From NCBI RefSeq assembly GCF_036588685.1, contig NC_086375.1, positions 86,552,001-86,616,000 on the forward strand: DNA of 64,000 bases, in the 5' to 3' direction. The notes under the pieces were generated by a model that searched no databases, was not told where the DNA came from, and saw only the letters and a program-made list of their open reading frames with translations. The translations under genes and the position numbers were made by a program. The number at the start of each line of letters is the position of its first letter. Positions within the stretch are counted from its first letter, which is position 1. Below are positions 242 to 64,000 of the stretch, in pieces. The DNA comes from Mytilus trossulus (taxonomy: Eukaryota).

Positions 242-3200
242 ATTTCGAGACAATATGAAGGATCTAGAGATCATGATGCAGAATATGATGGACTCGGCAT
301 TTGAAACTGTAAAGACAGTCGAAGGAGGTGTGGAATTATTGGATATTTTCTGTCATCTGTCACCAAGGGAGGTAAGTTATGATTTTCTCTGCATTGTGAC
401 AAGGGAAGTAAGTTAGGATTTTCTCCGCATTGTGACAAAAGTCACTGATTTTGTCAGCAAGGAAATTATAGAAATCACAAAGAACTTTTACTTATTTAGC
501 AGTTAATTTATTGAATATCTATAGTAGTTGTCATCAAGATAAGTAATGAAGGAATTTTGCAATTTTTACTGTGACAGTTTAAATATGGGATATATTTTCT
601 GTCATATGTTATAAAGGGAGGTAAGTGGACTGTGTGACAGGAATTACAACTTATACTGTCAATACTTGAACTGCCGTCAAAAATAAATTACAAAGTGATG
701 AGAAATTTTGACATTTTTTGACAAGGAAGGTATTTTAAAGTCATAATATATGCTTTTGACAAGGTGACAACAATTGAGGAATGCCTTAACAAATTTTGAT
801 GTTTTCTGCCATTTATAATGAAACAAATTTGCCATAGGTTATTTGAATGTAAATATTTCTGATAGGAAAGTGTTAAGTTTTACTAGAAACATATGCTTTT
901 TGGAATATTTTATATCTTTTGGTTAGATTAAAGACTCATGTATTTCAGTTGCTTTTAAAGTAACTTAACTAAACAGATAATAATACAGAAAATAGGCAGT
1001 TAAAATAAACTCCTTATGATGTAATAGACAACTAATTCAGAGTTGTAAAATTGTAATATTATCTATTTTAACCATGTTTTATATTTTCAGGCCATTAAGA
1101 GGATGATTGATAAGAAGACCAAGGATGTGTTTATAATGTTTAATGCAGAACTAAATTGTGTCAAGGTGGAACTATCCTCCAAACCAGAACTACAAATGTC
1201 TGACCATCCAAAGTATGCTGGACTAGCTCTGTGGGCCAGACATCTCAGGAATAGAATACAAAGAAACATGAATGTAAGGTTAACAGTCTGTATTCATATA
1301 TATCAATGTGATATACACAGGTTTTCTTGTTAAAAAATTGTCACATTTAATCATTGTCAGTTATTTGTAGGAATGTTTTTTTTCTATTCCAAAATGATTC
1401 CTTTTGTCAAAAAAATATTATTTGTTTATCATCTACAAATTTGCAAATGTTTTCTTGATTTCATATTTGGATTAAATAGAATTAGACATAGGTATTCTTT
1501 AATCTGCCAACATTTATTAAAGCTAAGTTTATTCTATCTTTTATTTATAAACAGTTGCTATCAAAGTCCCATTTCCTGCCCTTTACTGGGACTGGAGAAG
1601 AGGTTAGAGGTGCCTTTATACAGTTAAATCAGGCTCTTGATGAGTACATGAGGAAAACCTTTCATGAGTGGACTTTGTGTATTGTTAAAGTAAGTACTTT
1701 TTGTTTGAAGACTTTTTTTTTTTAGAAAATAATCAGTTCAGTAAAAAGTCAAAGAGGACATACATTGAAAATTATTTCAGAAACATTGTTTATAGACTGT
1801 TAAGTTGATTTATGCAATGAAACATTATTCAGAGCTTTATATATGGTTGGCCACTTGTCACCTACACCAGATTTAAATTATATATATATGGTTTGGCTAC
1901 TTATCATTTAGACCAGATTCAGAGCTTAATATATTGTATGGTCTGTGTATTGACATGTAAAACTCTTTGTAATATATATATATATAAATATGTATATAAA
2001 TGGAGAATCTGATGTTTTAGGATCCAATGAAGTTACTTGACATTCCCCTGATGTGTAGAAGTACTGAGAGACCTCCAATGTTAGATATCAATTTTGACAA
2101 GTAAGTTATTTCAAATGTAAATTTATGAACTAAAACACACTTAAAAGTTGAATTTCTGTTGTAAGAGAAAGAAAGACCTTATTTTAGATATCACTTTCGA
2201 CAGTTCAGAGAACTTCTAAGGTGGGATCAATTTTGATACTGGAGAAGATTTTATTTGAGATATATCAGTTATGATAGATAGGAAACGTTCCAAGGTAGGG
2301 ATCAATTTTGGAGCAAGAGGAGATCTCATTTTAGATATCACTCAAGACAGATGAGAGACACGCTAAGGTTTAATATCAGTTTTGACCATAGAAAACCCAT
2401 ATCAGTTGTGACATATAAGAGACTGTCATTGATTGGATATTACTATTCTAATTGTTCATTTAGTTCATGTTTTTTCTCTCTCACAAAAGTAGAAAAGTTC
2501 TATATTTTTTTATATTTTAATTTCAGGAGACTTGATAAGCTTTTCCAGGAGGTACATTATTGGGAGAGATTGAATTTTGATATTCCTCACTATGTACGCA
2601 TGGCTTACAACAGAAGGGAAGATCTCAGAAATTTGAAAGAGCATGTTCTCTTGGTTGTCAGAGATTATAACAGGTATGATAAAGTACAATATAAAAATAT
2701 GTTCATTTTGTTCTCATAGATAATTACAAGCATGGTCTATATAAATAATAAAAGATCAATGTAAGATATATCTCAGATGCTGTAGTACCGTATTCAGCCA
2801 TGTATAGTCAGCAGTTATGTAAAGTCTGCACCCCTTTTAATCCCCCAAAACCTAACTATAATTTAAGAGCTCACACTACTTAAGAATCATAAAGAGAAGT
2901 GACTTATTTATTTTATTTAATAGGAAGAATTTGTAATACCTCAGAAAGAGTTGCTTGTTCAATCCCTGCATACAATTCGTTTGGTTTAACATTATTGCTT
3001 TAATTTTGACATTTGTATCCTATTTATGCCATTCTTTTATTTGGCATATTAAAAAGTAATCTGACTGCCCTAGTCACCCTGTAAAGTGAGCCTTGAGTTT
3101 GATATTTATTCATATGAACTTCATTAAAGCCAAGATTGTGTAATCTGCTGGGAAGTCACTGTTTGTTCTTTATATTTTCATATTTTAAAATTTTTCATTT

Positions 3201-8158: not shown

Positions 8159-11100
8159 GTGAAAAGATTTGTCTTACTCAAAGTTTTCTGTATAGTGTAA
8201 CATAGACAGTCAGGCTTTTGATAGTTTTTTTGTTTTGGTCATAATGTTTGTTTTCCTTGTGGTTTTTGATTGCCTTGCATGGATTAACTTTAAGACATAC
8301 TGCATTTTCCTTTTTGTATGTTTATAACCATTTTCAAACACATTTGTATGAATGGATGAACTTATGTTCCAAGACTTTTAGATACTTAAGTAGCATAAAC
8401 CACTAGCACAGGATAAACAAAATATATATGATATAATTTCTGTGCATAAAACACATGTTTCTTGATTTGCCTTCAACAGCCCACGAACAAAAGTTTGGAA
8501 ATACAACAATGTAAAACTTGTGTGAGAGCATAAAACCAAAAGGGCCATTTCAGTCAAAATCATCTTTACTGTTAACTAATTATTGTAGTTTAATTTTACA
8601 GAATAAATCAGCTTCCCCAGACATTATCAGAATTAGGTATAAGTTTAAACTTATGGGACAAATTACATAATGAGCTGGAAGCGACAGAGGAAAAGTTTGC
8701 ACCACTGGCAGAACAATTTCAGGTTCTGGAGAAATATCAAGTTACAGTAGAAGAAAAGGTATAAATAAAAGTAGAATAAAATTTTTGTTTTCTGATTTAA
8801 CCCAAGGGGGACTGGGTATAGAAATATGATCATCCCTTGGTCTTCTTCATACTGGACATAAAACCCTCTCAAAGTTGGGTGTCTGTTTGGTTGTGCAGGA
8901 TGTACAAATTCCTTATCATGTGAGGTCAGAATGGGGAAATTTTATCAGAAGACTTATCATGTACCAAATAGTTGCCACTGGACATTAAGTGTACTGTAGA
9001 TCTCTTTCATGCAATGTAAATTTGAAGTTTCTATATTTTCCAAAGGAGAAATGTCCAATGATTGTATATACTTTTATTAAGGAGCACTATGTGCTTTTAT
9101 ATAAAGCATTATGAAAATAATTCTATAAATATTTTAACTAAACCTTATTTATTGACAATACGACATACATGTTAAACGAGGGAGACAATCACAATTTGTG
9201 TGCATTATGGATATTCTAACCAATATATAAGGTATAATTTGACCTGTGTATGAGAGATATTAAGAACAATTAATACTGTAAGGTTCTACCAATCATTGAT
9301 ATATAGGACTTTAGAATTAGGAAAGCAATATATTATCTGCCATTTCTGTTTCTATAATTTGATTTGATGACATCTTTGAAATTTGTTTTGAACACTTTCT
9401 CTTACAGTATTTGACGACACAAGAAAAGTTAAAAGATGAGTGGTTTATATTCCAAGAGAGTTTGAAAGAGGCTGAAGGCATGTTGAAGAAACATAAGGTA
9501 TATATTTGTAGTGAACACAAACATTGATTGCTGGATTTTTTTTTATATTGTATTTAATTCACCTACATATTGCTTGATATATCTACCTTATTTGGCATAC
9601 CCATAAATAAATGGAGTTGTTAGTTAAATTCCTGTAAAAACCATGTCTATCCTTTGTTTAGTGCATATTTTGATAGCAAAGGTGTGAAGAAATAGAAGTT
9701 TCTTTATAATGGAAGCTCCAAATTGAAAAAAAATATTATGGAATATTATTTCCACTGGAATAAATATTACAGTATATGTTCCAAATATGAATAAATATTA
9801 CAGTATATGTTCCAAATGGAATAAATGGTATAGAACATTTGTTCCAATATCATCAGATTTTATGACATTGTTTATAACAAAGTGTCCAGTGGAACATATA
9901 AATATATGTTGACAGAAGGCATTATCTTTTATCATTAAGTTTGTGCACCTGTCTGTTAGTCTGTATATGCAACTCTTTTAAAAATTATTATATGTGTTTT
10001 CAGGATATATTTAAAGCAGGATTACTAGCTCAATCTGATGAGTTCAAGAAAAAAGTACATTTCTTGTTAGATAACTTTCAGAAGAATGGACCGTTCACTA
10101 GTACTATAGGGACAGGAGAAGCTTTAGAGAGTATCAGTGTAGTTCAGGAACAACTCATGGCCTTCAAGAAAGCTCAACAGGAGATTAGAGATGGGCTTAA
10201 TATCTTCAAAATAGATCAGCCACCAAATAAAGAAATAGCTTTTATGGAGAAGGTAGGAAAATAGAAATGTTCTCACTATATTCATGATTATAGACCAGCC
10301 CCTAATAAAGAAATGTTTTTTTTTATTGTTAAAAAATAGAAATAGGTCTCATTATATTCATGATCATAGACCAGACTCTTAATAAAGAAATGGTTTCTTG
10401 AAAAAAAGGAAAATATAGATGGTCTCATTATATTTGAATTTAGAAGACATAAAATGCAACATATTACAAATGGCCTTATTAACTTAAGTATAGATAAAAC
10501 ACTTTATCAAACATACAAACAAATGCTAACCTTATAAATAAAAAATGAAATCTATGAGGTATAAAAATACCACTGGTAAGTTTTGACTGTTAATTGAATA
10601 AGTTTGCTTCGGAAATATAAGTTATTGACTTTTTGAAGAGGTGGATGCAATGGTTCATCAACCTCAGAGTAAAACTATATTTTCACAGATATAGTTTTAC
10701 CAGAGGAATGAGAATTTGTAAGCTTAAACTGGTTGGTTCAATAACCTGGTTGTTTTATTATAGGATTTACAATATATAGAAGATATCTGGTTGATGAACA
10801 AAGAATGGGAGACATCGTGGGCTGAATGGAAAGTGAACAAGTTTGTAGATCTACAGACAGAGACCATGGAAGCATCAGCTATAGCTGATCATAAGAAACT
10901 ATTGAAGTATAGTAAACTATTAGCGGTAAGTACTCAAAACAGTTTGCTTTCAAAGCAGCATTTTATTCTCATATATTTACAAAATAAAAGAAAAGCCTTT
11001 AGGTTTGTTTCCTACCAGAATTACATCCTATAACCCCTCACAGAGCTACTTGTATGCTGAAATATAATTACTGTTATTAATAGGCTATTTAAATATAAAT

Positions 11101-14100
11101 ATTTTTCTTCCTGAACAATTGCTTATATACTTCCATGCTTATACAAACATGTTCTATATCTATGATAACTATTCATTTCAGGACAGGAACTGGGAAGTTG
11201 TTGAGACAAGTAAAAACCGTGTTGATCAGTTCAAACGTACCATGCCCCTGATAAATGACCTGAAAAATACCGCCATGAGAAAAAGACATTGGGACAAAAT
11301 CCAGGTATTACAGTGTTACATGTATCTCAGAAATAGATTATATCATTATAAATAGATTCTTGCAAACAGAGTTGGGTTTCACTTTGTCTTTCAGTTATGA
11401 CATTAAGTTTTACTTTGTCTTTTATTAAAGACATCAAGTTTCACTTTGTCATTCAGTAATAACATCAAGTTTCTTTTATTCTTTTAGTAATGACATAAAG
11501 TTTCACTTATTCAACCAGTGTAGACATTAAGTTTCACATTGAGTTTTAGTGATGACATTAGGTTCCACTTTGTCCTTAAAGTAATGACATATTCTTTGTT
11601 TAATGATAATTCGTTTCACTTCGTCTTTGGTTTAACAATTAAGTTTCATTTAACCACTAGTAAAACAAAACAGATTTACTTCACTTTTTCTTTAGTAATG
11701 GCATTAGTTTCACTTTGTCTTTAGTAATGGCATTAAATTTCACTTTTTCTTTAGTTTCACTTTGTCTTTAGTTCCACTTTGTATTACAGAATGAGATGGG
11801 GAAGGATTTTGATCATAAATCCAATGATTTTACTCTAGAGAAGATTATAGAGATGGGATTTGATCATTATGCAGAACTTATACATGATATATCAGAGGCT
11901 GCTACTAAGGAGCTAGTCATTGAACAGGTAATTATACATTCAGATATATAATTTATAGATTAGTTAGACATTGAGCTAGTTATTACAGTCTTCATAATGA
12001 ATAGATGAAAGTCACCTTTGACAGTAATTGTCATGTGGAATATTTTAAATGAAGTGATAGAAATATAAAGCAGAAATACACACCCAGTTTGTAATAAAAT
12101 CTATATTATATTTTTATAATAGCAAAACAAAATACATATATGTTAAAAAAAATGAATTCTGATTAAGTTAAAATAAATGCATTTAAAATTTTGTTGCTTT
12201 AAGCTCTCTTTGCTACTAAATTTCAACTTGTTTCTATTTAAATAAATTAAATGTGTAATGTATTTGTTGCAGGGACTTGAAGTAATAGAAGCAGTATGGA
12301 ATACAACAGATCTTGAAATTATACCATATAAAGATAGGGGTCACTACAAGCTTGTGTAAGTATTAGAAATTATACCATATAAAGATAGGGGTCACCACAA
12401 GCTTGTGTAAGTATTAGAAATTATACCATATAAAGATAGGGGTCACTACAAGCTTGTGTAAGTATTAGAAATTATACCATATAAAGATAGGGGTCACTAC
12501 AAGCTTGTGTAAGTATTAGAAATTATACCATATAAAGATAGGGGTCACTACAAGCTTGTGTAAGTATTAGAAATTATACCATATAAAGATAGGGGTCACT
12601 ACAAGCTTGTGTAAGTATTAGAAATTATACCATATAAAGATAGGGGTCACTACAAGCTTGTGTAAGTATTAGAAATTATACCGTATAAAGATAGGGGTCA
12701 CTACAAGCTTGTGTAAGTATTATAAGATCAAAGGACATTGAGAGGTATTGGTAATCTCATAAAAAGTTCTCCTCCCATCCATGACACAAAATCAGTTAAT
12801 GTAAAACAGCCCCATGCATTGGTTTGAGTGGAATTCTTTGCAAAAATAATTTGGATAGACTTTGTAAGATGTGAAAGTTTTTCTTTATAAAAATATCGGT
12901 AAACATAAGCTTATTTGAGTATTTTGTCAACGTTTCACCTTATGAAAATAGAGGTCACCGGTATAATTTTCAAGGTTTTTTACCTTATAAAGTTAGTTGT
13001 AACTAAAAGCTAGATAGAATCAAGGTTGTATTTTATAATGATTGAGCAGGGAGAATTTCATAGCTATTCTAGGGAAATTTTAATAAATGTGCTATAGGCA
13101 CATATTTCTGGATACATTTCAATCTGTAAAAATACTGGAAATCAAATCAATTAACCAATTAAAAATTTATTGTATAGTCTTTAAAAAATTCCACAAATTT
13201 CTTCAAAAATGAGAAATAACAAATTTGTTTTTTAACATTTACAGAGGTGTTGAAAATGTTTTTGCTTGCTTAGATGAGAATCAGATGCGACTATCCTCAA
13301 TGAAGGCCTCCAGATTTATCAAAGCTTTTGAAACTGATGTTGACAGATGGGAGAAAATTTTATCAAACATTTTGGAAGTTATAGAAATTCTTCTACTGGT
13401 GCAGAAAGAATGGATGTATTTAGAGGTAAGTACATTCTATTATTCAAATCGGAGTAAGTAATGATAGATGGTAGAACATTATAACTAACATTGGATAAAT
13501 TACTGAAACTTGTCAATCAATGAAAATGAATGGATGTATTTGGAGGTTGGCACAATTGTATTCAGTAAAATAGCGAAAATTTAAATTGATACAATTGAAT
13601 CATAGAGAAGGTTCTACTGCTATGTAGAGTTTTAAGCAATTTGTAAGGTCCACAGGTTCAGAGTAATAAGAAATCGGGAGAATTTTTTCTGCCAAACTGA
13701 TGAATTTAATTCAACAGAAAAACACTATTGATTTAAACCATAGAACTTGGTACTGATCAGAACTAATATTTTCAGAATATTTTCCTTGGAGAAGATATAC
13801 GTAAACAGCTACCAAGAGAATCTTCTAACTTTGATGAAGTGAATGTGAAATGGAAAGCTATAATGACCAGAATGCATGGTGATAAAAATGCCTTACGTTG
13901 TACACATTATCAAGGTAAATGTCTTTTCTTTAGACTTTATTGTTTATTGTGTTTCTTTCCACCATTAGCAGCTAATTCAAAATTCTGACCCAATTGCAAT
14001 CTGTTTTATCAAATACAACTGTTCAACTCGTCATAAATTTTACAAAAATGTTGCAGAAAAAAACAGTCTGGACATAAATGTTACAAATGTAATGTGAAAA

Positions 14101-53100: not shown

Positions 53101-56100
53101 CAAAAGTGGTGAAAATAAGCCAAAATCCCAAATTTAGAAATGACCTTAACCTTTGACACTCTTTTTTCTTTCTTTTTTTTTGGACCAAGGATCTCAAATC
53201 AAAAGACCATAGGTCTTTATCACTTATGGTTTACAAGCTACAACAAAAAATTTCTTATTAAAACTACAAAAGGGGAAATAACTCCCATATGTAGTCTCCT
53301 GACCTCTTTGGTCAAAATTATTTGTAAGAACCTGAAGATATAACGAGCAAATTGGTGAAATAATTTAGTCATTATTTTTAACGGTTGTGAAGGAGATTTG
53401 TACACAAGAAAAACTGTTTGGGGAGATAACTCGAACAATAAAAAAATATTAAAAAGTGTTCAGCTTAACAGGGTCAGTTTCAAATTCGTAATAACTGTTC
53501 AATATCATATGTAAAAAATCTAAGCGACATATTGCGAAACAAAAACATACCAACAGAAAAAAGTGGTGGAAGAAGAAGAAAAAAAATAATAATAATAATA
53601 AACAGAAGAAAACCAATAGGTCTTTCCACAGAAAAGTGAAAAGACTGAAAAAAAGAAACTAACAGCCTAATTTATAATAAAACATTTTATGAAAAACAAA
53701 TATTGCAGACATGAATATAGGACAATCACTGTACTTCAGGCTCCTGATTTGGGACATTTATTTAGTCTATATTTAAATAAGTAGATCCTGGATGATTCTT
53801 TACTTTTTAGGTATTGAACCTGGCTGCCAATATCTATAAACAGATCCCAGATGATATGGATTATGAAGGAACAGTAAAGATTCTTGAGAGTGATCACAGA
53901 CCAATCAACATTGTATTATTGCAGGAAGTAAGAGTGATATATCTTTTGATTGTGTTATTAATATAACTGTATATCAAAGAAAAGGGACTTTTATTGCTGT
54001 TCTTCATCCTGGTATTTATTGGAAGTTCTCCATCTTTTCAGATTAAGATATTCACTTTAAGCATGACCCCCTATAATTTGAGTGGTATTGTCATGTTATT
54101 GAGAACACATTAAGCCTGACACTTTAAATTTGAAAATTTCACTTTCGTCCATGTCGTCACAATAGCAATAGCGAAGATTTATTTATCTTACAAATGAAAA
54201 ACTGAGGACAAGGAAACTGCTAGTAGTCTGTTGTTATTTATGTATTATTGTCATTTTGTTTATTTTCTTTGGTTACATCTTCTGACATCAGACTCAGAAT
54301 TCTCTTGAACTGAATTTTAGATGTGCGTATTGTTATACGTTTACTTTTCTACATTGGCTAGAGGTATAGTGGGAGGGTTGAGATCTCATAAACATGTTTA
54401 ACCCCATCTCATTTTTGCACCTGTCCCAAGTCAGGAGCCTCTTGCCTTTGTTAGTCTTGTATTATTTTAATTTTAGTTTCTTGTGTACAATTTGGAAATT
54501 AGTATGGCGTTCATTATCACTGAACTAGTATAAATATGTATTTGTTTAGGGGCCAGCTAAAGGACGCCTCCAGGTGCGGAAATTTCTCGCTACACTGAAG
54601 ACCTGTTGGTGACCTTCTGCTGTTGTTTTTCTATGGTCGGGTTGTTGTCTCTTTGACACATTCACCATTTCAATTCTCAATTTTAAAGTGTAGATTGTCA
54701 AAAAAGTTGGTGTGAGATTTGTGAATCAAAAAATTTAAAAACCTAATGTGATTGAGTAGTTTACTGTTAAGAATGCTGTATAAAGAATAATAAGTATGCT
54801 AAAGGTAAGAACACATCTTTGTATAGGGAAAACTGTAGCTTGAATAGTAGGATATTTATTCTAAAAAAAAACATTGCTTCCTGATGCTTAAGGTAGATGT
54901 AAAAAAAAAAAAAAAAAACCTTTTAATTCTTGACAATAAGTTAATAGTGACACCAAACTTATTTTTTATCCAGATTGAGAGATACAATACTTTAATGGGA
55001 ATAATCAGAACAGCTCTGACAAATTTAGAGCAAGGTATTAAAGGCTTAGTTGTGATGACAATGGAGTTGGAGAATACATTCCAGTGCATATTTGATGGCC
55101 GAGTTCCACCCACTTGGCTTAAGGTTTGTTTAGTTTTGTTTTACTTTAAAGTAGAAGAGTCGATAAAAAAGTGAAAATTTCTCAACAGTTTTCATGTGAT
55201 ATATCTTTTAAACTGGAAGCAATATAGATATATGAACAAGCATTATCTAAGACATAATTAACCAATCAGAATCAGTAGATATATTGTGAAGATTTAAAAG
55301 ATATAATCATACTTTCTGCAGTTACATATACCCAAAACTCACTAACTTTTATGTTTTTATCCATTAAAAAAATAATTCTTTCATGCCATGCTATTATTCA
55401 GAATTATTATACTTCTAAGTGAACCTATGATTTGCATTCAAAAGGCAGCTATTTTGGTTTGAAAAACATAGTTGGACGAGAGTTGATTCAGCTTCTTGTA
55501 CTTATATTTGTATCAAGTGAGTAAAATGTCATATTTTAATTTAGAGATTATTTTTATAGGCTTACCCATCACTTAAGCCATTAGCTTCATGGACCAGAGA
55601 CCTTGTTGTTAGGGTAGAACAGCTTTCAAAATGGTCCAAAAGAGCAAATCCCCCTTTTATATACTGGATACCAGGTTTTACTTTGCCTACTGGTTTCCTG
55701 ACTGCAGTACTACAAACATCAGCTAGACAAAACAATGTAAGTGTATTTATGCAACAACAATCAATAATATAATGGATACCAGGCTTTACTTTGCCTTCTG
55801 ATTTCTTGACTGCTGTAGTACAAACATCAGCCAAATAATGTAAGAGTATATGCTACACCAATCACCAATATATTTATATTAAATATATATTATTTTAAAC
55901 AGTTTAGCAATTTGATTATTCATTGAAGTCACAAAAAACTTTGACTCTATGGCAATTGTCTATATAGCGCTTGTGTGCTTTGATTGCTTTTCCTCCTTGT
56001 ATAAGAACTTTGCAGATGGATTAAAAAAAAATGTAAGAAGGTTTTCAATCCCTGTTTCTTGTCTTTTTAAAAGATTTTTTATCATTATTGTAGATGAATT

Positions 56101-59100
56101 GATTATTTTTAAACATTTGCACCTCTGTTAGTTGTGAGAAATTAGAAGTATAGCTGTCCATGATTTTATTTTAGTGTATTATCTATATTATAGGTGTCTA
56201 TTGATACCTTGTCTTATGAATTCAGCATTATAGCTGTCGGTGATTTTATTTTAGTGTATTATCATTATAGGTGTCTATTGATACTTTGTCTTGGGAGTTC
56301 AGCATTATAGCTGTCAGTGATTTTATTTTAGTGTATTATCTATATTATAGGTGTCAATTGATACTTTGTCTTGGGAGTTCAGCATTATAGCTGTCGGTGA
56401 TTTTATTTTAGTGTATTATCTATATTATAGGTGTCTATTGATACTTTGTCTTGGGAGTTCAGCATTATAGCTGTCAGTGATTTTATTTTAGTGTATTATC
56501 ATTATAGGTGTCTATTGATACTTTGTCTTGGGAGTTCAGCATTATAGCTGTCAGTGATTTTATTTTAGTGTATTATTTATATTATAGCTGTCTATTGATA
56601 CTTTGTCTTGGGAGTTCAGCATTATAGCTGTCGGTGATTTTATTTTAGTGTATTATCTATATTATAGGTGTCTATTGATACTTTGTCTTGGGAGTTCAGC
56701 ATTATAGCTGTCAGTGATTTTATTTTAGTGTATTATCTATATTATAGGTGTCTATTGATACCTTGTCTTGGGAGTTCAGCATTATAGCTGTCAGTGATTT
56801 TATTTTAGTGTATTATCATTATAGGTGTCTATTGATACTTTGTCTTGGGAGTTCAGCATTATAGCTGTCAGTGATTTTATTTTAGTGTATTATCATTATA
56901 GGTGTCTATTGATACTTTGTCTTGGGAGTTCAGCATTATAGCTGTCAGTGATTTTATTTTAGTGTTTTATCTATATTATAGGTGTCAATTGATACTTTGT
57001 CTTGGGAGTTCAGCATTATAGCTGTCAGTGATTTTATTTTAGTGTATTATCTATATTATAGGTGTCTATTGATACTTTGTCTTGGGAGTTCAGCATTATA
57101 GCTGTCAGTGATTTTATTTTAGTGTATTATCATTATAGGTGTCTATTGATACTTTGTCTTGGGAGTTCAGCATAATAGCTGTCAGTGATTTTATTTTAGT
57201 GTATTATCATTATAGGTGTCAATTGATACTTTGTCTTGGGAGTTCAGCATTATAGCTGTCAGTGATTTTATTTTAGTGTATTATCATTATAGGTGTCTAT
57301 TGATACTTTGTCTTGGGAGTTCAGCATAATAGCTGTCAGTGATTTTATTTTAGTGTATTATCATTATAGGTGTCTATTGATACTTTGTCTTGGGAGTTCA
57401 GCATAATAGCTGTCCGTGATTTTATTTTAGTGTATTATCATTATAGGTGTCTATTGATACTTTGTCTTGGGAGTTCAGCATTATAGCTGTCAGTGATTTT
57501 ATTTTAGTGTATTATCTATATTATAGGTGTCTATTGATACTTTGTCTTGGGAGTTCAGCATTATAGCTGTCAGTGATTTTATTTTAGTGTATTATCATTA
57601 TAGGTGTCTATTGATACTTTGTCTTGGGAGTTCAGCATAATAGCTGTCCGTGATTTTATTTTAGTGTATTATCATTATAGGTGTCTATTGATACTTTGTC
57701 TTGGGAGTTCAGCATTATAGCTGTCAGTGATTTTATTTTAGTGTATTATCTATATTATAGGTGTCTATTGATACTTTGTCTTGGGAGTTCAGCATTATAG
57801 CTGTCAGTGATTTTATTTTAGTGTATTATCTATATTATAGGTCTCTATTGATACTTTGTCTTGGGAGTTCAGCATTATAGCTGTCAGTGATTTTATTTTA
57901 GTGTATTATCTATATTATAGGTGTCTATTGATACCTTGTCTTATGAATTCAGCATTATAGCTGTCAGTGATTTTATTTTAGTGTATTATCATTATAGGTG
58001 TCTATTGATACTTTGTCTTGGGAGTTCAGCATTATAGCTGTCGGTGATTTTATTTTAGTGTATTATCTATATTATAGGTCTCTATTGATACTTTGTCTTG
58101 GGAGTTCAGCATTATAGCTGTCGGTGATTTTATTTTAGTGTATTATCATTATAGGTGTCTATTGATACTTTGTCTTGGGAGTTCAGCATTATAGCTGTCA
58201 GTGATTTTATTTTAGTGTATTATCTATATTATAGGTGTCTATTGATACTTTGTCTTGGGAGTTCAGCATAATAGCTGTCAGTGATTTTATTTTAGTGTAT
58301 TATCATTATAGGTGTCAATTGATACTTTGTCTTGGGAGTTCAGCATTATAGCTGTCAGTGATTTTATTTTAGTGTATTATCATTATAGGTGTCTATTGAT
58401 ACTTTGTCTTGGGAGTTCAGCATTATAGCTGTCGGTGATTTTATTTTAGTGTATTATCTATATTATAGGTCTCTATTGATACTTTGTCTTGGGAGTTCAG
58501 CATTATAGCTGTTGGTGATTTTATTTTAGTGTATTATCATTATAGGTCTCTATTGATACTTTGTCTTGGGAGTTCAGCATTATAGCTGTTGGTGATTTTA
58601 TTTTAGTGTATTATCTATATTATAGGTGTCTATTGATACTTTGTCTTGGGAGTTCAGCATTATAGCTGTCAGTGATTTTATTTTAGTGTATTATCTATAT
58701 TATAGGTGTCTATTGATACTTTGTCTTGGGAGTTCAGCATTATAGCTGTCAGTGATTTTATTTTAGTGTATTATCTATATTATAGGTGTCTATTGATACT
58801 TTGTCTTGGGAGTTCAGCATTATAGCTGTCGGTGATTTTATTTTAGTGTATTATCTATATTATAGGTCTCTATTGATACTTTGTCTTGGGAGTTCAGCAT
58901 TATAGCTGTCGGTGATTTTATTTTAGTGTATTATCTATATTATAGGTGTCTATTGATACTTTGTCTTGGGAGTTCAGCATTATAGCTGTCAGTGATTTTA
59001 TTTTAGTGTATTATCTATATTATAGGTGTCTATTGATACTTTGTCTTGGGAGTTCAGCATAATAGCTGTCAGTGATTTTATTTTAGTGTATTATCATTAT

Positions 59101-62100
59101 AGGTGTCAATTGATACTTTGTCTTGGGAGTTCAGCATTATAGCTGTCAGTGATTTTATTTTAGTGTATTATCATTATAGGTGTCTATTGATACTTTGTCT
59201 TGGGAGTTCAGCATTATAGCTGTCGGTGATTTTATTTTAGTGTATTATCATTATAGGTGTCAATTGATACTTTGTCTTGGGAGTTCAGCATTATAGCTGT
59301 CAGTGATTTTATTTTAGTGTATTATCATTATAGGTGTCTATTGATACTTTGTCTTGGGAGTTCAGCATTATAGCTGTTGGTGATTTTATTTTAGTGTATT
59401 ATCATTATAGGTCTCTATTGATACTTTGTCTTGGGAGTTCAGCATTATAGCTGTTGGTGATTTTATTTTAGTGTATTATCTATATTATAGGTGTCTATTG
59501 ATACTTTGTCTTGGGAGTTCAGCATTATAGCTGTCAGTGATTTTATTTTAGTGTATTATCTATATTATAGGTGTCTATTGATACTTTGTCTTGGGAGTTC
59601 AGCATTATAGCTGTCGGTGATTTTATTTTAGTGTATTATCTATATTATAGGTCTCTATTGATACTTTGTCTTGGGAGTTCAGCATTATAGCTGTCCGTGA
59701 TTTTATTTTAGTGTATTATCATTATAGGTGTCTATTGATACTTTGTCTTGGGAGTTCAGCATTATAGCTGTCAGTGATTTTATTTTAGTGTATTATCTAT
59801 ATTATAGGTCTCTATTGATACTTTGTCTTGGGAGTTCAGCATTATAGCTGTCCGTGATTTTATTTTAGTGTATTATCTATATTATAGGTGTCTATTGATA
59901 CTTTGTCTTGGGAGTTCAGCATTATAGCTGTCGGTGATTTTATTTTAGTGTATTATCTATATTATAGGTCTCTATTGATACTTTGTCTTGGGAGTTCAGC
60001 ATTATAGCTGTCAGTGATTTTATTTTAGTGTATTATCTATATTATAGGTGTCTATTGATACTTTGTCTTGGGAGTTCAGCATTATAGCTGTCAGTGATTT
60101 TATTTTAGTGTATTATCTATATTATAGGTCTCTATTGATACTTTGTCTTGGGAGTTCAGCATTATAGCTGTCAGTGATTTTATTTTAGTGTATTATCTAT
60201 ATTATAGGTCTCTATTGATACTTTGTCTTGGGAGTTCAGCATTATAGCTGTCAGTGATTTTATTTTAGTGTATTATCTATATTATAGGTGTCTATTGATA
60301 CTTTGTCTTGGGAGTTCAGCATTATAGCTGTCAGTGATTTTATTTTAGTGTATTATCTATATTATAGGTGTCTATTGATACTTTGTCTTGGGAGTTCAGC
60401 ATTATAGCTGTCAGTGATTTTATTTTAGTGTATTATCTATATTATAGGTGTCTATTGATACTTTGTCTTGGGAGTTCAGCATTATAGCTGTCAGTGATTT
60501 TATTTTAGTGTATTATCTATATTATAGGTCTCTATTGATACTTTGTCTTGGGAGTTCAGCATTATAGCTGTCCGTGATTTTATTTTAGTGTATTATCATT
60601 ATAGGTGTCTATTGATACTTCTTCTTGGGAGTTCAACATTATAGCTGTCAGTGATTTTATTTTAGTGTATTTGTAAAGCAAAATTATATCCGGGTGAAAT
60701 TTGATCCGGAGGAAAAAATGTCACAGTAGTTGTTGTTATTTTTTTATCTGGAGGAAAATATTTCCCTGGGATATTTTTTCCTTTGCCGTGAAATTATATC
60801 TGGGTAGTTAACTTATTGAATAGTTATTAGATAAAACTTATCCATTACAAATACTATGAAATAATAATGGTGTATTTGAATTAAACCTATTTTGTAAAAA
60901 ACAATGTATTATAATTGGAATTATTTCACAAATTATCATTGAAAAAAATTCCTGAAAAAAATTCAAGTAAACATCAATCTTTTAAAAAAAAAATTATCAT
61001 TAAACTATAAGTAAGAAAGAAAATCAGAAATTATTTCAAAGATCGTAATTGTGAAATAATATCATGATTAAATATGGTAAGTTAAATACATGTAAAAGTG
61101 AGTTGTTTTCAGATCTCAGTACAAATATAATTAAAAGGTAAATGTTGAAATATAGTTGCATTACCAATGTTAACAGTAATGGGAGAATTTGATTATGATA
61201 ATATTTTTAACTATATAAATAGTCTGGGGACAAAGATGTTGTTGTTGATTATATGGAAATCAGATAAATCATACTATTAGCATAACAATATATTGGAACA
61301 AAAGCAATTTTAACAGCTGGATAGTATTTACCTGTGAAATGTTATCTGTCTTATTAAAAATTCATGTTGTAAGTCATCTTGTTATATAAATGAATATATA
61401 AAAAATAAGATTCAAGGAAAAATTTCACTATGAAATAGATTCAGGAATATGCTATATTAATATCTTTAAATATAAATTGCTCATAATTACCTCCCTTTGA
61501 TAAATTATGCAAATTTGTTCTACCTTTGTGAAACATTTTATAATTAAAGTCAGGTATATATTGATTGCAAGTAACTTACATACTAGTTAATGGGACTATA
61601 TTTCACAAGGTTCTGTGAAATATGATACGGTAAATATATACCCGTACACACTATCCGAATAACACAGATAGATTTTCACTCCTCTGGAAAAATTCTACCT
61701 GTGAAATACCATGCCTGGAAAAAATTTACCGTGACAAACTATCCTCAGGATAAAATATCACAGAGGAAGAAATAAACCGTTACATATTATCATTATAGGT
61801 GTCTATTGATACTTTGTCTTGGGAGTTCAACATTATAGCTGTCAGTGATTTTATTTTAGTGTATTATCTATATTATAGGTGTCTATTGATACTTTGTCTT
61901 GGGAGTTCAACATTATAGCTGTCAGTGATTTTATTTTAGTGTATTATCTATATTATAGGTGTCTATTGATACTTTTTCTTGGGAGTTCAGCATTATAGCT
62001 GTCCGTGCTTTATTTTAGTGTATTATCATTATAGGTGTCAATTGATACTTTGTCTTGGGAGTTCAGCATTATGACTGTCAGTGATGAAAACATTATAGGA

Positions 62101-64000
62101 CCACCAAAGGTAAGGTATAATGTATAAGAATATTGAAGACACCATCATAATTTGTGTGAGTTAAGAAATAATAGAGATGAAACATAGTCTTTTTACATAT
62201 TTATTATAAAATGCAAAATAAAAACTAACTCATGTAGAAAAAGTACAAAATTAACAATACAAGAGCCATGTAAAAGGTAAAATGACAAAAATACTGATCT
62301 CCCAGGAAAATTCAAATCAGAAAGCTCATACACATTCAACTAATTGAAAAAAGCTGTCATACTATTGATTTGGTAATGTTTTTAAGCTTGATCATGTTGA
62401 TTAACGTTGCAAAATTTGATATGTTTTGTTATGTAATACAAGAGTTCAATCAAGTTTTGAAAAGGAGTAGAGCTGTCGACTTATAATTTAATGTTTCCCA
62501 AATGCATATTTGTAAGTGCTTTTGATCAAAATAAATTGGCTGTTTTATTCCCAAAATATCAATTTTAAAAAATCTTAAAGTTGTAATTCCTTTTTACGCT
62601 CAACTTAAGACAAAACAGCACACAGATATGACTAAGAATCACTGGTTTCTTTTTCAGTCATATTTTTGAGCTCATTTAATTATCTTACCTAAAAGTCTGT
62701 TTTATGTGTACTGTTTTAAGTTACTGTTTTATGTGTACTGTAGGATGGTGTCTATGTGAAAGGTTTATTCCTACAAGGAGCCGGTTGGGACATGAAGAAT
62801 TCTTGTTTAGTAGAAGCCAAGCCTATGGAGTTAGTATGTCCTGTTCCAACCATTCATTTCAAACCGGTGGAAAACAAGAAAAAGTCAGCAAAAGGTAACT
62901 ATCTGTTATAATTCTTCAAATTATTGTTAGATTTTGTTACATGGTGTCTGTTGTTTTTATACCCCACCTACGAGAAGAGGGGCATTATGTTTTCTGGTCT
63001 GTGCCTCCGTTTGTTCGTCCATTCGTTCGTTCGTCCGTTCGCTTCAGGTTAAAGTTTTTGGTCGAGGTAGTTTTTGATGAAGCTGAAGTCCAATCAACTT
63101 AAAACTTGATACACATGTTCCCTATGATATGATCTTTCTAATTTTAATGCCAAATTATAGTTTTGATCCCAATTTCATGGTACACTGAACATAGAAAATG
63201 ATAGTGCAAAGTTCAGGTTAAGTTTTTGGTCAAGGTAGTTTTTGATGAAGTTGAAACTTAGTACACATGTTCCCTATGATATGATCTTTCTAATTTTAAT
63301 TCCAAATTAAAGTTTTGACCCCAATTTCACGGTCCACTGAACATAGAAAATGATAGTGCGAGTGGGGCATCCGTGTACTATGGACACATTCTTGTTATTC
63401 GTTGTATTAAAGTGTAGGGCTACATGGTAAATTTATATTATAAATGGATGAATGTGAAATCTAAAATTAATGCCTTCATAAATAATTTTTATTTAAAAGT
63501 GCTTGTAAACCTATATTTAATAATTATGCAAAGATTGTAGACAGATCATCATTAAAGGGGGAGTAGAGTGAACCTTGGGTCAATCTAAATCTTGAACTTT
63601 ATCTATTACAGGAATATACACTTGTCCATGTTATTACTACCCCAACAGAGCAGGGAGTGGAGAGAGGTCCTCCTTCATTGTAGAGGTGGAGTAAACCCTG
63701 AGTCAAAGTAAATCTTAAACTTTATCTATTACAGGAATATACACTTGTCCATGTTATTACTACCCCAACAGAGCAGGGAGTGGAGAGAGGTCCTCCTTCA
63801 TTGTAGAGGTGGAGTAAACCCTGAGTCAAAGTAAATCTTGAACTTTATCTATTACAGGAATATACACTTGTCCATGTTATTACTATCCCAACAGAGCAGG
63901 GAGTGGAGAGAGGTCCTCCTTCATTGTAGAGGTGGAGTAAACCCTGAGTCAAAGTAAATCTTGAACTTTATCTATTACAGGAATATACACTTGTCCATGT
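242..64000 (+). CDS. DNAH2: Axonemal dynein heavy chain, DNAH2-like; multi-exon gene, 5' and 3' partial
   Basis: 69 exons with consistent phases (listed in the blocks below) give one continuous dynein heavy chain ORF. P-loops are GPAGTGKT (AAA1), GGTQSGKT (AAA2), GPVGTGKT (AAA3) and GIGGSGHKS (AAA4). Other motifs: [53 protein letters not shown]2-type segments recognised from memory: [35 protein letters not shown]. Orthologue versus paralogue status not verified. Confidence 0.9.
3455..3708. mobile_element. Non-autonomous Helentron/HINE (DINE-1-like) element copy
   Basis: Starts TTTTTAATATGCCCCATTTATGG, then GTCC/GTCT-type microsatellite and core GGTAGTTTTTGATGAAGTTGAAGTCCAATCAACTTGAAACTTAG. 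Homologous to 22769-23110 and 62953-63395. Family name is inference. Confidence 0.6.
4790..5172. mobile_element. Interspersed repeat (SINE/MITE-like)
   Basis: GACTATGCGGTATGGGCTTTGCTCATTGTTGAAGGC...CATCTTCTTTTTTATAT recurs at about 19885-20000, 49220-49390 and inverted at about 52140-52330. The AACATGTTTAACCCCGCC...AGTCAGGAGCC segment is shared with the 47672/54222 family. Confidence 0.65.
5677..6167. mobile_element. MITE with terminal inverted repeats
   Basis: TIR AAAGGAGTAGGTCCAGTAAG / CTTACCGGACCTACTCCTTT, flanked on both sides by the direct repeat GCATAC; no ORF. Confidence 0.85.
6195..6372. repeat. About 28-bp degenerate minisatellite abutting the acceptor of exon 6374
   Basis: About 6 copies of CCATATGATCTTACATATAATTCTTA. 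Confidence 0.8.
8602..16886 (+). CDS. DNAH2: DNAH2 exons 12-24 (tail end and linker, DHC_N2)
   Basis: Exons 8602-8758, 9408-9497, 10004-10252, 10764-10925, 11182-11304, 11790-11927, 12273-12355, 13245-13425, 13776-13914, 14490-14710 (GC donor inferred), 15163-15255, 15905-16135, 16698-16886. Peptides include [73 protein letters not shown]. Confidence 0.88.
11370..11800 (+). repeat. About 31-bp degenerate tandem array, probably derived from the acceptor at 11789
   Basis: Units such as GTTTCACTTTGTCTTTCAGTTATGACATTAA resemble GTTCCACTTTGTATTACAG|AATGAGAT. Confidence 0.7.
12315..12722 (+). repeat. 8 x 51-bp tandem array spanning a 5' splice site
   Basis: Unit GAAATTATACCATATAAAGATAGGGGTCACTACAAGCTTGT|GTAAGTATTA; the first copy is the real exon end. 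Confidence 0.97.
17388..17586. repeat. 9-bp microsatellite-like repeat (AATGTAATA)n
   Basis: About 20 imperfect copies ending just upstream of the acceptor at 17596. Confidence 0.9.
17597..22226 (+). CDS. DNAH2: DNAH2 exons 25-28 (AAA1 and lid)
   Basis: Exons 17597-17893, 18274-18454, 19434-19714, 22101-22226. Peptides [73 protein letters not shown]. Confidence 0.93.
19107..19278 (+). mobile_element. Fragment of an abundant interspersed repeat
   Basis: AAAATTGAGAATGGAAATGGG...ACAACCCGACC...GCACCCGGAGGC; homologous to 47672-48494 (+) and 54222-54685 (-), with shorter pieces at about 37510-37680 and 52610-52685. Confidence 0.8.
20118..22165 (+). repeat. 105-bp tandem array spanning a 3' splice site (19 acceptors)
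   Basis: Acceptor AGs end at 20204, 20312, 20417 ... 21995, 22100. Each unit is the exon start ([19 protein letters not shown]) plus about 40 bp of intron end. Two 108-bp variant units at 20205 and 21258. Confidence 0.97.
22769..23110. mobile_element. HINE/DINE-1-like element copy
   Basis: TTTTTATGCCCCATTTATGGGCATTA hairpin, GTCT/GTTC microsatellite, end GGGCATCCGTGTACTTGGGACACATTCTTG; homologous to 62953-63395. Confidence 0.7.
23187..33622 (+). CDS. DNAH2: DNAH2 exons 29-39 (AAA2 and AAA3)
   Basis: Exons 23187-23405, 26842-26959, 28140-28420, 28754-29163, 29379-29577, 29993-30217, 30528-30632, 31160-31348, 32016-32101, 33077-33207, 33473-33622. Peptides [74 protein letters not shown]. Confidence 0.92.
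24072..25260. mobile_element. Hairpin-ended non-autonomous element (Helentron-like) nested in the MULE
   Basis: Terminal palindrome AGGTCTTTCCAC-TTTTCT-GTGGAAAGACCT and CAAGGTCA/TGACCTTG motifs; inverted homologue at about 52790-53650. Right boundary approximate. Confidence 0.65.
25560..26425 (+). pseudogene. MULE transposase remnant (frameshifts and stops)
   Basis: Fragments [34 protein letters not shown] and [51 protein letters not shown] match the MULE pattern RTNNxxEGWHxxL..HPNIF. Confidence 0.8.
27150..28060. mobile_element. MITE/foldback element with long imperfect inverted repeats
   Basis: Ends TAGTCCAGT / ACTGGACTA. Internal mirrored blocks CAAATATACACAGAAAAAAGTCCCA versus TGGGACTTTTTTCTGTGTATATTTG, and GGGAGATAACTCTGC versus GCAGAGTTATCTCCC. 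Confidence 0.8.
30985..31183 (+). repeat. 3 x 66-bp tandem array spanning a 3' splice site
   Basis: Acceptors end at 31027, 31093 and 31159; the unit is in frame and stop-free. Confidence 0.95.
32378..32745. mobile_element. Palindromic MITE-like insertion inside a decayed HINE-like copy
   Basis: About 160-bp hairpin: ATTGAATGCTTCTTTT..GTAAAAGCGTTGACCG..TGAAGCGC-GGAA-GCGCTTCA..CGGTCAACGCTTTTAC..AAAAGAAGCATTCAAT. Confidence 0.7.
34290..41024 (+). CDS. DNAH2: DNAH2 exons 40-50 (AAA4, stalk coiled coil, MTBD)
   Basis: Exons 34290-34457, 34996-35156, 35755-35894 (GC donor), 36426-36558, 37233-37378, 37857-38067, 38662-38778, 39155-39296, 39789-40078, 40505-40669, 40899-41024. Peptides [61 protein letters not shown]. 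Confidence 0.92.
38710..39057 (+). repeat. 93-bp tandem array spanning a 5' splice site (3 intact donors plus a decayed copy)
   Basis: Donors at 38779, 38872 and 38965; in-frame repeat [31 protein letters not shown]. Confidence 0.96.
41315..51034 (+). CDS. DNAH2: DNAH2 exons 51-63 (AAA5, buttress, AAA6)
   Basis: Exons 41315-41530, 41844-41994, 42455-42604, 42956-43088, 43350-43494, 43946-44145, 44653-44779, 45244-45430, 47250-47455, 49016-49141, 49516-49713, 50434-50625, 50850-51034. Peptides [73 protein letters not shown]. Confidence 0.92.
45660..46561. mobile_element. Probable solo LTR (Gypsy-type) inserted in a (TA)n tract
   Basis: Termini TGTAACGATTT / AAATCGTAACA with ATAT on both sides; about 0.9 kb and non-coding. 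Confidence 0.6.
46582..46740 (-). mobile_element. tRNA-derived SINE-like element in (TA)n
   Basis: Minus strand has A box GTGGTCTAGCGG and B box GGTTCGAATCC; no convincing full cloverleaf; flanked by TA repeats. Confidence 0.65.
47368..48702 (+). repeat. 103-bp array spanning a 5' splice site (5 donors), interrupted by a repeat insertion
   Basis: Donors GCG|GTAAGT at 47456, 47559, 47662, 48583 and 48686. Confidence 0.95.
47672..48494 (+). mobile_element. Interspersed repeat inserted in the 103-bp array
   Basis: Homologous to 19107-19278 and to the reverse complement of 54222-54685; lacks the first about 35 bp of those copies. Confidence 0.85.
49748..50340. repeat. About 32-bp degenerate minisatellite
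   Basis: GTAACTCCAGAGTAATCAATTATGCAATTAAA x about 15, with one inverted copy near 50300-50335. Confidence 0.85.
51619..62894 (+). CDS. DNAH2: DNAH2 exons 64-69 (C-terminal domain)
   Basis: Exons 51619-51844, 53811-53927, 54974-55123, 55560-55736, 62035-62109, 62744-62894. Peptides [61 protein letters not shown]. Confidence 0.9.
52790..53650. mobile_element. Inverted copy of the hairpin-ended element at 24072
   Basis: CAATAGGTCTTTCCACAGAAAAGTGAAAAGAC and CTAAGCGACATATTGCGAAACAAA are reverse complements of segments in 24072-24200. Confidence 0.75.
54222..54685 (-). mobile_element. Interspersed repeat copy
   Basis: Near-collinear reverse complement of 47672-48100 plus the 19107 terminus. Confidence 0.85.
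56148..62085 (+). repeat. About 60-copy 80/77-bp tandem array spanning a 3' splice site
   Basis: Unit GTGTCTATTGATACTTTGTCTTGGGAGTTCAGCATTATAGCTGTCAGTGATTTTATTTTAGTGTATTATC(TAT)ATTATAG. The last copy (acceptor 62034) is the real 75-bp exon. Copy number estimated from length. Confidence 0.97.
60672..61784. mobile_element. TGT..ACA element with 4-bp TSD (Ginger-like non-autonomous element or solo LTR)
   Basis: Ends TGTAAAG / CGTTACA. TSD TATT (60668-60671, 61785-61788) is verifiable against the neighbouring empty repeat units. Confidence 0.8.
62953..63395. mobile_element. HINE/DINE-1-like element with duplicated core
   Basis: TTTTTATACCCC..GGGGCATTATG start, (TTCG/TCCG)n, two tandem core repeats of about 160-170 bp, end GGGGCATCCGTGTACTATGGACACATTCTTGTT. 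Confidence 0.75.
63558..64000 (+). repeat. 123-bp tandem array spanning the acceptor of the terminal exon (runs off window)
   Basis: Acceptors end at 63611, 63734, 63857 and 63980; each full copy reads [27 protein letters not shown]. Confidence 0.95.

What the first reader, a model, noticed from the sequence alone, without database searches (positions are those of the whole stretch)
242..64000. Gene-wide system of splice-junction tandem duplications ('junction echoes') at about 25 exon boundaries
Seen: copies of an exon edge plus its splice site are stacked into the adjacent intron. Donor-side cases follow exons ending at 371, 2100, 10252, 12355, 13425, 16135, 30217, 33622, 38778, 41994, 44779, 47455, 51844 and 55736. 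Acceptor-side cases precede exons starting at 7958, 11790, 19434, 22101, 28140, 28754, 31160, 43946, 45244, 53811, 62035 and the terminal exon. Units are 30-125 bp, unrelated to one another, and range from identical arrays to barely recognisable relics. The largest tandem arrays in the window are all of this type. Inference: a recurrent, long-running process seeds minisatellites at splice junctions and builds intron sequence from exon edges. It may be a junction-biased mutational mechanism (co-transcriptional break or R-loop repair, slippage) or unbiased duplication filtered by selection and tolerated through exon definition.
Basis: partly seen in the sequence, partly recalled or inferred. Interest (0 to 1): 0.9.

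Follow-up and report, generated by a model that had tools for sequence, protein, structure and literature searches.

The report
Splice-junction minisatellites throughout a dynein gene
In one mussel dynein gene about twenty exon-intron boundaries have been copied in tandem into the neighbouring intron, far more often than chance placement predicts, while the cell still splices at the original sites. The repeat type is known from a few human genes, but this density is unusual.

Summary

**Gene.** The window holds about 70 exons of a DNAH2-type axonemal dynein heavy chain gene on the + strand.

- 20 have a clear copy of the exon edge plus splice site in the adjacent intron.
- 4 are weak relics: 10252, 51844, 7958 and 11790.
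- 2 are not supported: 28140 and 53811.

**Enrichment.**
- 14 of 24 arrays with period 25 or more span a true junction. About 3.4 are expected if units were seeded at random wherever tolerated (none of 20,000 simulations reached 14).
- 7 of the other 10 arrays lie within 35 nt of a junction (2.1 expected).
- These arrays make up about 17% of the intronic DNA.

**Splicing and reality.**
- An RNA contig joins the exon-contiguous sites at four arrays and skips the copies.
- DNA contigs from another run span two arrays.

**Sequence differences and other genes.**
- Differences between copies and the real exon are enriched for synonymous changes (38 of 80, 19 expected).
- Three other dynein genes in the same genome carry the same feature at about one sixth of the rate.

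**Status.** The kind is known from human F7, CBS, IFI6, LMNB2 and PDGF. Acceptor-side arrays, the density and the junction bias are the new part, and the cause of the bias is unresolved. The scan had already noted this phenomenon in other genes of this genome.

The parts
242..64000 (+). DNAH2-type axonemal dynein heavy chain gene, exons for residues ~474-4398 of a 4430-aa reference; 70 exons, 139 junctions
   Evidence: RNA contig confirms five junction pairs
364..438 (+). donor array at exon end 371: 36 bp x 2.1, 92% identity; a further copy at 592-626
10255..10434 (+). 76 bp x 2.4 array starting 3 nt after donor 10252; exon 10211-10236 echoed at 10290-10314 (moderate support)
11376..11782 (+). 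29-31 bp arrays ending 7 nt before acceptor 11790; unit resembles the acceptor plus the first 8 exon nt (weak)
12315..12722 (+). donor array at 12355: 51 bp x 8, 99% identity; 41 nt of exon plus GTGTAAGT; 7 decoy donors, each giving an in-frame stop
13341..13547 (+). donor relic at 13425: exon 13341-13427 echoed at 13462-13547 (offset 121, ~71% identity)
16115..16321 (+). donor relic at 16135: exon edge echoed at 16297-16321
19342..19497 (+). acceptor duplicate at 19434: 80 bp x 2, 92% identity; all 3 differences are synonymous
20121..22164 (+). acceptor array at 22101: 105 bp x 19.4, 98% identity; 18 decoy acceptors, use gives an in-frame stop
28682..28795 (+). acceptor-side relic at 28754: exon 28764-28792 echoed at 28682-28710 (offset 82); decoy AG lost
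30174..30261 (+). donor relic at 30217: exon 30174-30201 echoed at 30234-30261 (offset 60)
30984..31181 (+). acceptor array at 31160: 66 bp x 3, 98% identity; decoys are in frame and open (+22 or +44 aa if used)
33575..33709 (+). donor duplicate at 33622: 69 bp x 2, 77% identity; decoy GT lost
38710..39044 (+). donor array at 38778: 93 bp x 3.6, 95% identity; decoys are in frame and open (+31 or +62 aa if used)
41943..42138 (+). donor array at 41994: 65 bp x 3, 76% identity
43760..44037 (+). acceptor array at 43946: 123 bp x 2.3, 87% identity; spanned by an independent DNA contig; RNA uses 43946
44772..44865 (+). donor array at 44779: 41 bp x 2.3, 88% identity; spanned by an independent DNA contig; RNA uses 44779
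45046..45256 (+). acceptor array at 45244: 47 bp x 4.6, 86% identity; RNA uses 45244; 3 of 5 decoy AGs lost
47368..48700 (+). donor array at 47455: 103 bp, 3 + 2 copies, 96-97% identity, split by a very high-copy repeat at about 47690-48494; RNA uses 47455; all 6 variant sites are synonymous
55659..55849 (+). donor duplicate at 55736: exon 55659-55746 echoed at 55767-55849 (88% identity)
56149..62085 (+). acceptor array at 62035: 80 bp x 57 (56149-60671) plus 3.7 copies (61792-62085); 60 decoy acceptors TTATAG|GT; fills about 76% of a 6.3-kb intron
63566..64000 (+). terminal-exon acceptor array: 123 bp x 3.5, 97% identity, running off the window end

Best explanation
These are independent minisatellites.

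**Origin (inferred).** Each was born when a 36-123-bp stretch straddling an exon-intron boundary was duplicated in tandem, and it was then expanded by further unequal exchange or slippage.

**Why it is tolerated.** The duplicate lies on the intron side. The only copy joined to the rest of the exon stays the real splice site, which is the first copy at a donor and the last at an acceptor.
- Shown: the spliceosome uses that copy at four arrays.
- Inferred for the others, from exon definition and from the 5'-to-3' donor choice described for human F7.
- Shown: almost every decoy would give a frameshift or a stop, so mis-spliced RNA would be unproductive.

**Later history.** The arrays keep turning over. 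Copies differ from the real exon preferentially at synonymous sites, arrays get interrupted by transposons, and they decay into relics. They now make up about 17% of this gene's intron DNA.

**Unresolved bias.** In this gene they arise or persist at junctions about four times more often than random tolerated seeding predicts. Other arrays also crowd against junctions, so there is a junction-proximal bias whose cause is not resolved. My split:
- about 55% a break/repair or recombination bias near exon edges;
- about 25% preferential retention, because extra splice-signal copies help or because junction-flanking DNA is protected from deletion;
- about 20% inflation because an extreme gene was chosen.
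For: - Tandem structure and exon-edge content.
- Excess over the random unit-seed null: 14 against 3.4-3.5, with 0 of 20,000 simulations reaching 14 and a Poisson tail of 2e-5.
- Seven of 10 non-junction arrays lie within 35 nt of a junction, against 2.1 expected (P = 5e-4).
- RNA contig X18 record 9 joins 44145>44653, 44779>45244, ~45430>47250 and leaves 47455, so it uses the exon-contiguous sites and skips all echoes.
- DNA contigs of run X2 span arrays 43760-44037 and 44772-44865 with a few differences from the window.
- A very high-depth repeat splits the 103-bp array.
- Decoy use gives a frameshift or stop except at 371, 38778 and 31160.
- Synonymous excess: 38 of 80 variant sites against 19.3 expected (P = 5e-6).
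- The same structures occur in other dynein genes: g1 at about 29960-30170, and g3 at 18091-18200, 26777-27113 and 30950-31150.
- Human precedents and first-donor choice: PMC1557585.
Against: - The window was selected for this pattern, so its P values are optimistic.
- In three dynein paralogs only 4 of 159 exon sides carry echoes. That is about 1.6 expected by my rough hand estimate, so not clearly above chance there.
- Splice-site use was seen in contigs of one RNA run, for four arrays only. Rare use of decoys cannot be excluded.
- The 2-kb and 4.5-kb arrays were not checked against reads, so their copy numbers rest on the assembly.
- Most of the synonymous excess is what simple two-lineage divergence predicts (about 39% synonymous). 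It does not by itself prove exchange with the functional copy.
Confidence: 0.75

Rival explanations
1. Chance overlap. The gene has a junction every ~460 bp, so ordinary intronic tandem repeats hit junctions often. No junction bias exists.
For: Junction density is high: 139 junctions in 64 kb, median intron 507 bp. Placing whole arrays at random already gives 8.4 overlaps against 13 observed (P = 0.03). Paralog genes show rates near expectation.
Against: A repeat can only cover a constrained exon edge if its unit contains that edge, so the seed-based null is the apt one. It gives 3.4-3.5 against 14. Non-junction arrays also crowd within 35 nt of junctions (P = 5e-4). The seven highest-scoring arrays all carry an exon edge.
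Confidence: 0.1
2. Assembly artefact. The arrays are created or inflated by mis-assembly of repetitive long reads.
For: Copy numbers of the 2-kb and 4.5-kb arrays were not checked. Short-read contigs break inside the 103-bp array.
Against: Contigs from another DNA run span two arrays and most of a third. The arrays carry internal variants and a transposon insertion. An artefact would not select exon edges. Earlier notes and three other dynein genes show the same structures.
Confidence: 0.04
3. Selected function. The reiterated splice signals are kept because they help. Extra donor copies would recruit U1, or extra branch-point and pyrimidine-tract copies would recruit U2AF. Either would strengthen exon definition or suppress premature polyadenylation in very AT-rich introns.
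For: Arrays cluster at and next to junctions on both sides. Decoy GT/AG dinucleotides are intact in the young arrays. Introns are about 30% G+C.
Against: In older arrays the decoy sites decay like the rest of the unit: 33622, 30217, 28754 and 45244 have lost GT or AG. Most junctions manage without arrays. There is no expression or splicing-efficiency data.
Confidence: 0.12

Closest known systems
Human exon-intron junction minisatellites: F7 IVS7 (37 bp), IFI6/6-16 intron 2, CBS IVS13 (31 bp), LMNB2 (100 bp), PDGF intron 4 (81 bp), as reviewed in PMC1557585
   Same: The first monomer spans the exon-intron boundary, so the donor is reiterated in the intron. Unit sizes are similar (31-100 bp). 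The authentic, most upstream donor is the one used.
   Different: The cases listed there are single, donor-side arrays, one per gene. Here at least 20 junctions of one gene are affected. Eight are acceptor-side, with up to 60 decoy acceptors. The arrays exceed random expectation about fourfold. Copy-number polymorphism, a hallmark of the human cases, was not tested here.
Variable internal tandem repeats at exon-intron boundaries in human segmental-duplication genes (PMC2812944), and introns arising from tandem arrays (Zhuo et al. 2007 PNAS, known to me only through its citation there and from memory)
   Same: Tandem repeats carrying splice sites sit at exon-intron boundaries and can reshape introns.
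   Different: In those cases the repeats create new or alternative introns and alter proteins. Here pre-existing introns are lengthened and the mRNA contig is unchanged.
Intron gain by tandem duplication of an AGGT-containing exon segment (PMC3265369, PMC4974935)
   Same: A tandem duplication involving exon sequence supplies splice-site copies.
   Different: That model makes a new intron between two exon copies. Here one end of the unit already lies in an existing intron, and the rest of the intron is unrelated sequence.
Small tandem duplications from Pol alpha-primase fill-in at DNA break ends (PMC8355091)
   Same: It is a known route to short local tandem duplications at double-strand breaks. 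I offer it as a candidate for the founding event.
   Different: Nothing here shows breaks at junctions. This is a mechanistic analogy only and was not tested.

Membership tests
Exon-intron junction minisatellite (F7 IVS7 type) | Head-to-tail array with units of tens of bp | tested here: met
   TRF periods 36-123 bp, 2 to 57 copies
Exon-intron junction minisatellite (F7 IVS7 type) | The terminal monomer spans the boundary, so the authentic splice-site sequence is reiterated in the intron | tested here: met
   14 arrays span a modelled junction; decoy cores are identical to the real site in the young arrays
Exon-intron junction minisatellite (F7 IVS7 type) | The authentic, exon-contiguous site is the one used | tested here: met
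   RNA contig X18 record 9 at 43946, 44779, 45244 and 47455; the other arrays were not tested
Exon-intron junction minisatellite (F7 IVS7 type) | Copy number varies between individuals (VNTR) | tested here: inconclusive
   X2 contigs match the window's copy number at two short arrays. Contigs cannot resolve the long arrays.
Intron gain by tandem duplication (Rogers model) | The intron consists of the duplicated exon segment between two exon copies | tested here: not met
   Arrays cover only part of each intron (for example 367 of 889 nt after 12355), and the remainder is unrelated sequence or transposons
Transposon-borne satellite | The unit recurs at other loci | tested here: not met
   No junction-array unit has a copy elsewhere in the window or in 180 kb of other loci, whereas true dispersed repeats do

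The most novel reading that the evidence does not exclude
Tandem duplication in this mussel is truly biased to exon-intron boundaries by a germline break/repair or recombination process. One possibility is that repair intermediates stall where conserved exon meets highly polymorphic intron. Another is breaks tied to splicing or transcription. Either way, exon edges would be a steady source of new intron DNA and of splice-site decoys, and some genes would act as hot spots.
Probability: 0.3. Interest if true: 0.85.

Novelty: new variant of a known kind. Interest (0 to 1): 0.62.

Why it matters
- **Intron origin.** If the junction bias is real, it is a measurable mutational route by which introns grow from exon sequence. 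That bears on how intron size and sequence evolve.
- **Splice-site choice.** The gene offers natural experiments in splice-site selection: up to 60 identical acceptors or 7 identical donors competing in one intron.
- **Gene annotation.** Repeated exon edges create false exons and false splice sites, which matters for anyone annotating mollusc genes.
- **Protein variation.** Three arrays (371, 31160, 38778) could add in-frame residues if a decoy were used.

Tried and rejected
- **Narrow echo test.** The 36 + 8 nt test missed relics whose echo lies deeper in the exon, so I repeated it with whole exons.
- **More paralogs.** I tried to fetch six more dynein loci for replication.
- **Position of the junction in the unit.** The exon fraction ranges from about 0.2 to 0.85 with no clustering at 0.5 (hand calculation). 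This gives no support for a break exactly at the junction.
- **Decoy splice-site conservation.** It shows neither clear preservation nor clear destruction.
- **Cross-species comparison.** Contigs of a ~8% diverged relative (X16) stop inside or beside the arrays and do not settle whether the arrays are shared.
- **Periods divisible by 3.** Eight of 14 periods are multiples of 3, which is suggestive only.
- **Literature.** I found no mollusc paper describing this. The mouse pseudoautosomal-region papers link intron minisatellites to high recombination but not to junctions. Zhuo et al. 2007 could not be opened.
- **Joined model.** Exons were searched by reference, and boundaries were set pairwise.

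Full report
**What the window is.** The + strand carries a large part of an axonemal dynein heavy chain gene. The P-loop exon matches solved DNAH2 chains best (E = 7e-51). A 4430-aa DNAH2-type reference (P0004) aligns exon by exon from residue 474 to 4398.

I chained the tblastn matches, filled six gaps, and set each boundary from GT/AG, frame and the reference. This gave 70 exons, 139 junctions, 19% exonic sequence and a median intron of 507 bp. Three boundaries were corrected by eye: donors 371, 19714 and 43494.

Exons were handled by reference, and that step is deliberately left out. The window has no N runs.

The genome is 1.30 Gb in 541 contigs, and the window is C3:86552001-86616000. My own data only show mollusc-labelled sequencing runs.

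Two further arrays are displaced pieces of junction arrays:
- 48490-48700 belongs to the 47455 donor array.
- 56149-60671 belongs to the 62035 acceptor array.

A control-calibrated test compared each exon edge with its own intron and with all other introns. It gives 19 strongly positive junctions plus the terminal-exon array. The whole-exon version adds 10252.

- 20 strong;
- 1 moderate (10252);
- 3 plausible relics (51844, 7958, 11790);
- 2 unsupported (28140, 53811).

The units have no copies elsewhere in the window or in 180 kb of other loci, unlike the true dispersed repeats in these introns. Summing the intronic parts of the arrays gives about 8.9 kb of 51.9 kb, or 17% of the intron DNA (hand sum). 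The arrays fill about 76% of the 6.3-kb intron before exon 62035.

A unit of the observed period is seeded uniformly. Seeds that fall wholly inside an exon or swallow a whole exon are rejected.
- Expected junction-containing units: 3.5 of 35 arrays, or 3.4 of the 24 arrays with period 25 or more.
- Observed: 14. None of 20,000 simulations reached that. The Poisson tail is 2e-5.
- Placing whole arrays at random gives 13 against 8.4 (P = 0.03). That null lets repeats overrun constrained exons, so it is too generous.
- The ten arrays of period 25 or more without recognisable exon sequence also hug junctions. Seven lie within 35 nt, against 2.1 expected from random placement inside their own introns (P = 5e-4).

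So 21 of 24 minisatellite-scale arrays sit on or against a junction.

The caveat is ascertainment, because this window was chosen for being striking. As a partial replicate I analysed 60 kb of each of three other dynein heavy chain genes of the same genome. They hold four unmistakable donor-junction arrays:
- a 152-bp duplicate in g1;
- a 36-bp, a 68-bp x 5 (100% identical) and a ~50-bp array in g3.

That is only 4 of 159 exon sides, against 20 of 139 junctions here (Fisher P = 2e-4). By my count, the density of non-junction arrays is similar in all four genes, at 0.10-0.17 per kb. The phenomenon is therefore general, but this gene is a hot spot specifically for junction arrays. The scan's notes list the same structures in many unrelated genes of this genome.

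**Are the arrays real DNA, and which sites are spliced?** I laid two DNA and two RNA runs on 43700-49699.
- Contigs of DNA run X2 carry a few differences from the window, so X2 is another individual or haplotype. They span the 123-bp array (43760-44037) and the 41-bp array (44772-44865), and most of the 47-bp array.
- A 1205-nt RNA contig (X18, record 9) runs through five exons. It joins 44145 to 44653, 44779 to 45244 and about 45430 to 47250, and it leaves at 47455.
- So the exon-contiguous donor (the first copy) and acceptor (the last copy) are used at all four arrays, and the echoes are skipped.
- Depth and loose ends show that about 47690-48494 is a very high-copy element inserted into the 103-bp array. 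This explains its two separated pieces and shows that the array predates the insertion.

**Consequences of decoy use.** Using a decoy would shift the frame or meet a stop at 12355, 13425, 22101, 41994, 43946, 44779, 45244, 47455, 55736, 62035 and 19434. Only 371 (+12 aa), 31160 (+22 or +44 aa) and 38778 (+31 or +62 aa) stay open and in frame.

Decoy GT/AG dinucleotides are intact in the young arrays: 7 donors after 12355, 18 acceptors before 22101 and 60 before 62035. They are partly lost in the old ones. That pattern looks like neutral decay rather than preservation or purging.

**Turnover.** Across 12 arrays, 80 distinct sites differ between echo copies and the functional exon. Of these, 38 are synonymous against 19.3 expected for random change (P = 5e-6).

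About 39% synonymous is expected if the echoes drift freely while the functional copy accepts only silent changes. Most of the excess therefore needs nothing exotic. The exceptions are the two youngest arrays with variants, 47455 (6 of 6 synonymous) and 19434 (3 of 3). Four of the 47455 variants differ among the echoes themselves. This suggests that echoes are repeatedly spawned from, or exchanged with, functional alleles that carry silent polymorphisms. The suggestion is an inference and rests on few sites.

**How it most likely works.**
- The founding event is a local tandem duplication straddling a junction. This is inferred. Slippage, unequal exchange, or fill-in at staggered break ends as in PMC8355091 are all candidates.
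- The duplicate is harmless because only one copy is contiguous with the exon and that copy is the one spliced. This is shown for four arrays. It agrees with the most-upstream-donor rule shown for the human F7 minisatellite (PMC1557585) and with exon definition for acceptors.
- Arrays then expand, exchange, get hit by transposons and decay.

The fourfold excess is not explained, and neither is the crowding of other arrays against junctions. A pure selection filter predicts neither. A junction-proximal bias in breakage, repair or recombination is my leading guess. Retention because extra splice signals help is second, and ascertainment accounts for some of the excess. The junction sits anywhere from 20% to 85% along the unit (hand calculation), so the data do not point to a break exactly at the splice site.

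**What is known.** Minisatellites whose first monomer spans an exon-intron boundary are described for human F7, IFI6, CBS, LMNB2 and PDGF. Variable repeats at exon-intron boundaries are catalogued in human segmental duplications (PMC2812944). The human cases listed are single, donor-side arrays. I found no report for molluscs.

The new parts are acceptor-side arrays, the density (about one junction in seven in a single gene), the share of intron DNA, and a statistically supported junction bias. I file it as a new variant of a known kind.

Noticed in passing
window 47690-48494: A very high-copy dispersed element (contig depth up to about 1e6 in DNA runs) is inserted inside the 103-bp donor array. 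Related pieces lie at 19104-19277, 37571-37679, 52610-52688 and 54509-54685.
   Followed up: partly
window 3460-3676, 22869-23121, 62954-63416: A dispersed repeat family of about 200-450 bp, with up to 9 copies in 180 kb of other loci. Its translation gives recurring 'GHYVFWSV...' pseudo-peptides that could fool exon finders.
   Followed up: no
window 24070-25230 and 52690-53645: Inverted copies of an element of about 1 kb (76% identical) in two different introns. Nearby open frames at 25530-26245 in the 3.4-kb intron may be transposon-derived. This was not searched.
   Followed up: no
G000:C3:86655892-86659347 (about 40 kb beyond the window end): A second dynein heavy chain locus lies on the same strand just downstream. 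It has unusually long open frames (479 aa), so it has far fewer introns than this gene.
   Followed up: no
window 14710 and 35894: The best-fitting donors of two introns are GC rather than GT (GCAATA, GCAAGA). No RNA evidence was collected there.
   Followed up: no
window, all junction arrays: Eight of 14 array periods are multiples of 3 (36, 51, 66, 69, 93, 105, 123, 123). One third would be expected, so this is marginal.
   Followed up: partly
window 60672-61791: A 1.1-kb stretch separates the two pieces of the 80-bp acceptor array. It has no copy in the window or in the 180 kb fetched, so unlike the 47690-48494 case it is not obviously a transposon.
   Followed up: partly
L013-L018 (g3, reverse strand, gene coordinates 26777-27113): In another dynein gene, a 68-bp x 5 donor-junction array is 100% identical across copies, so it is a very recent expansion.
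   Followed up: partly
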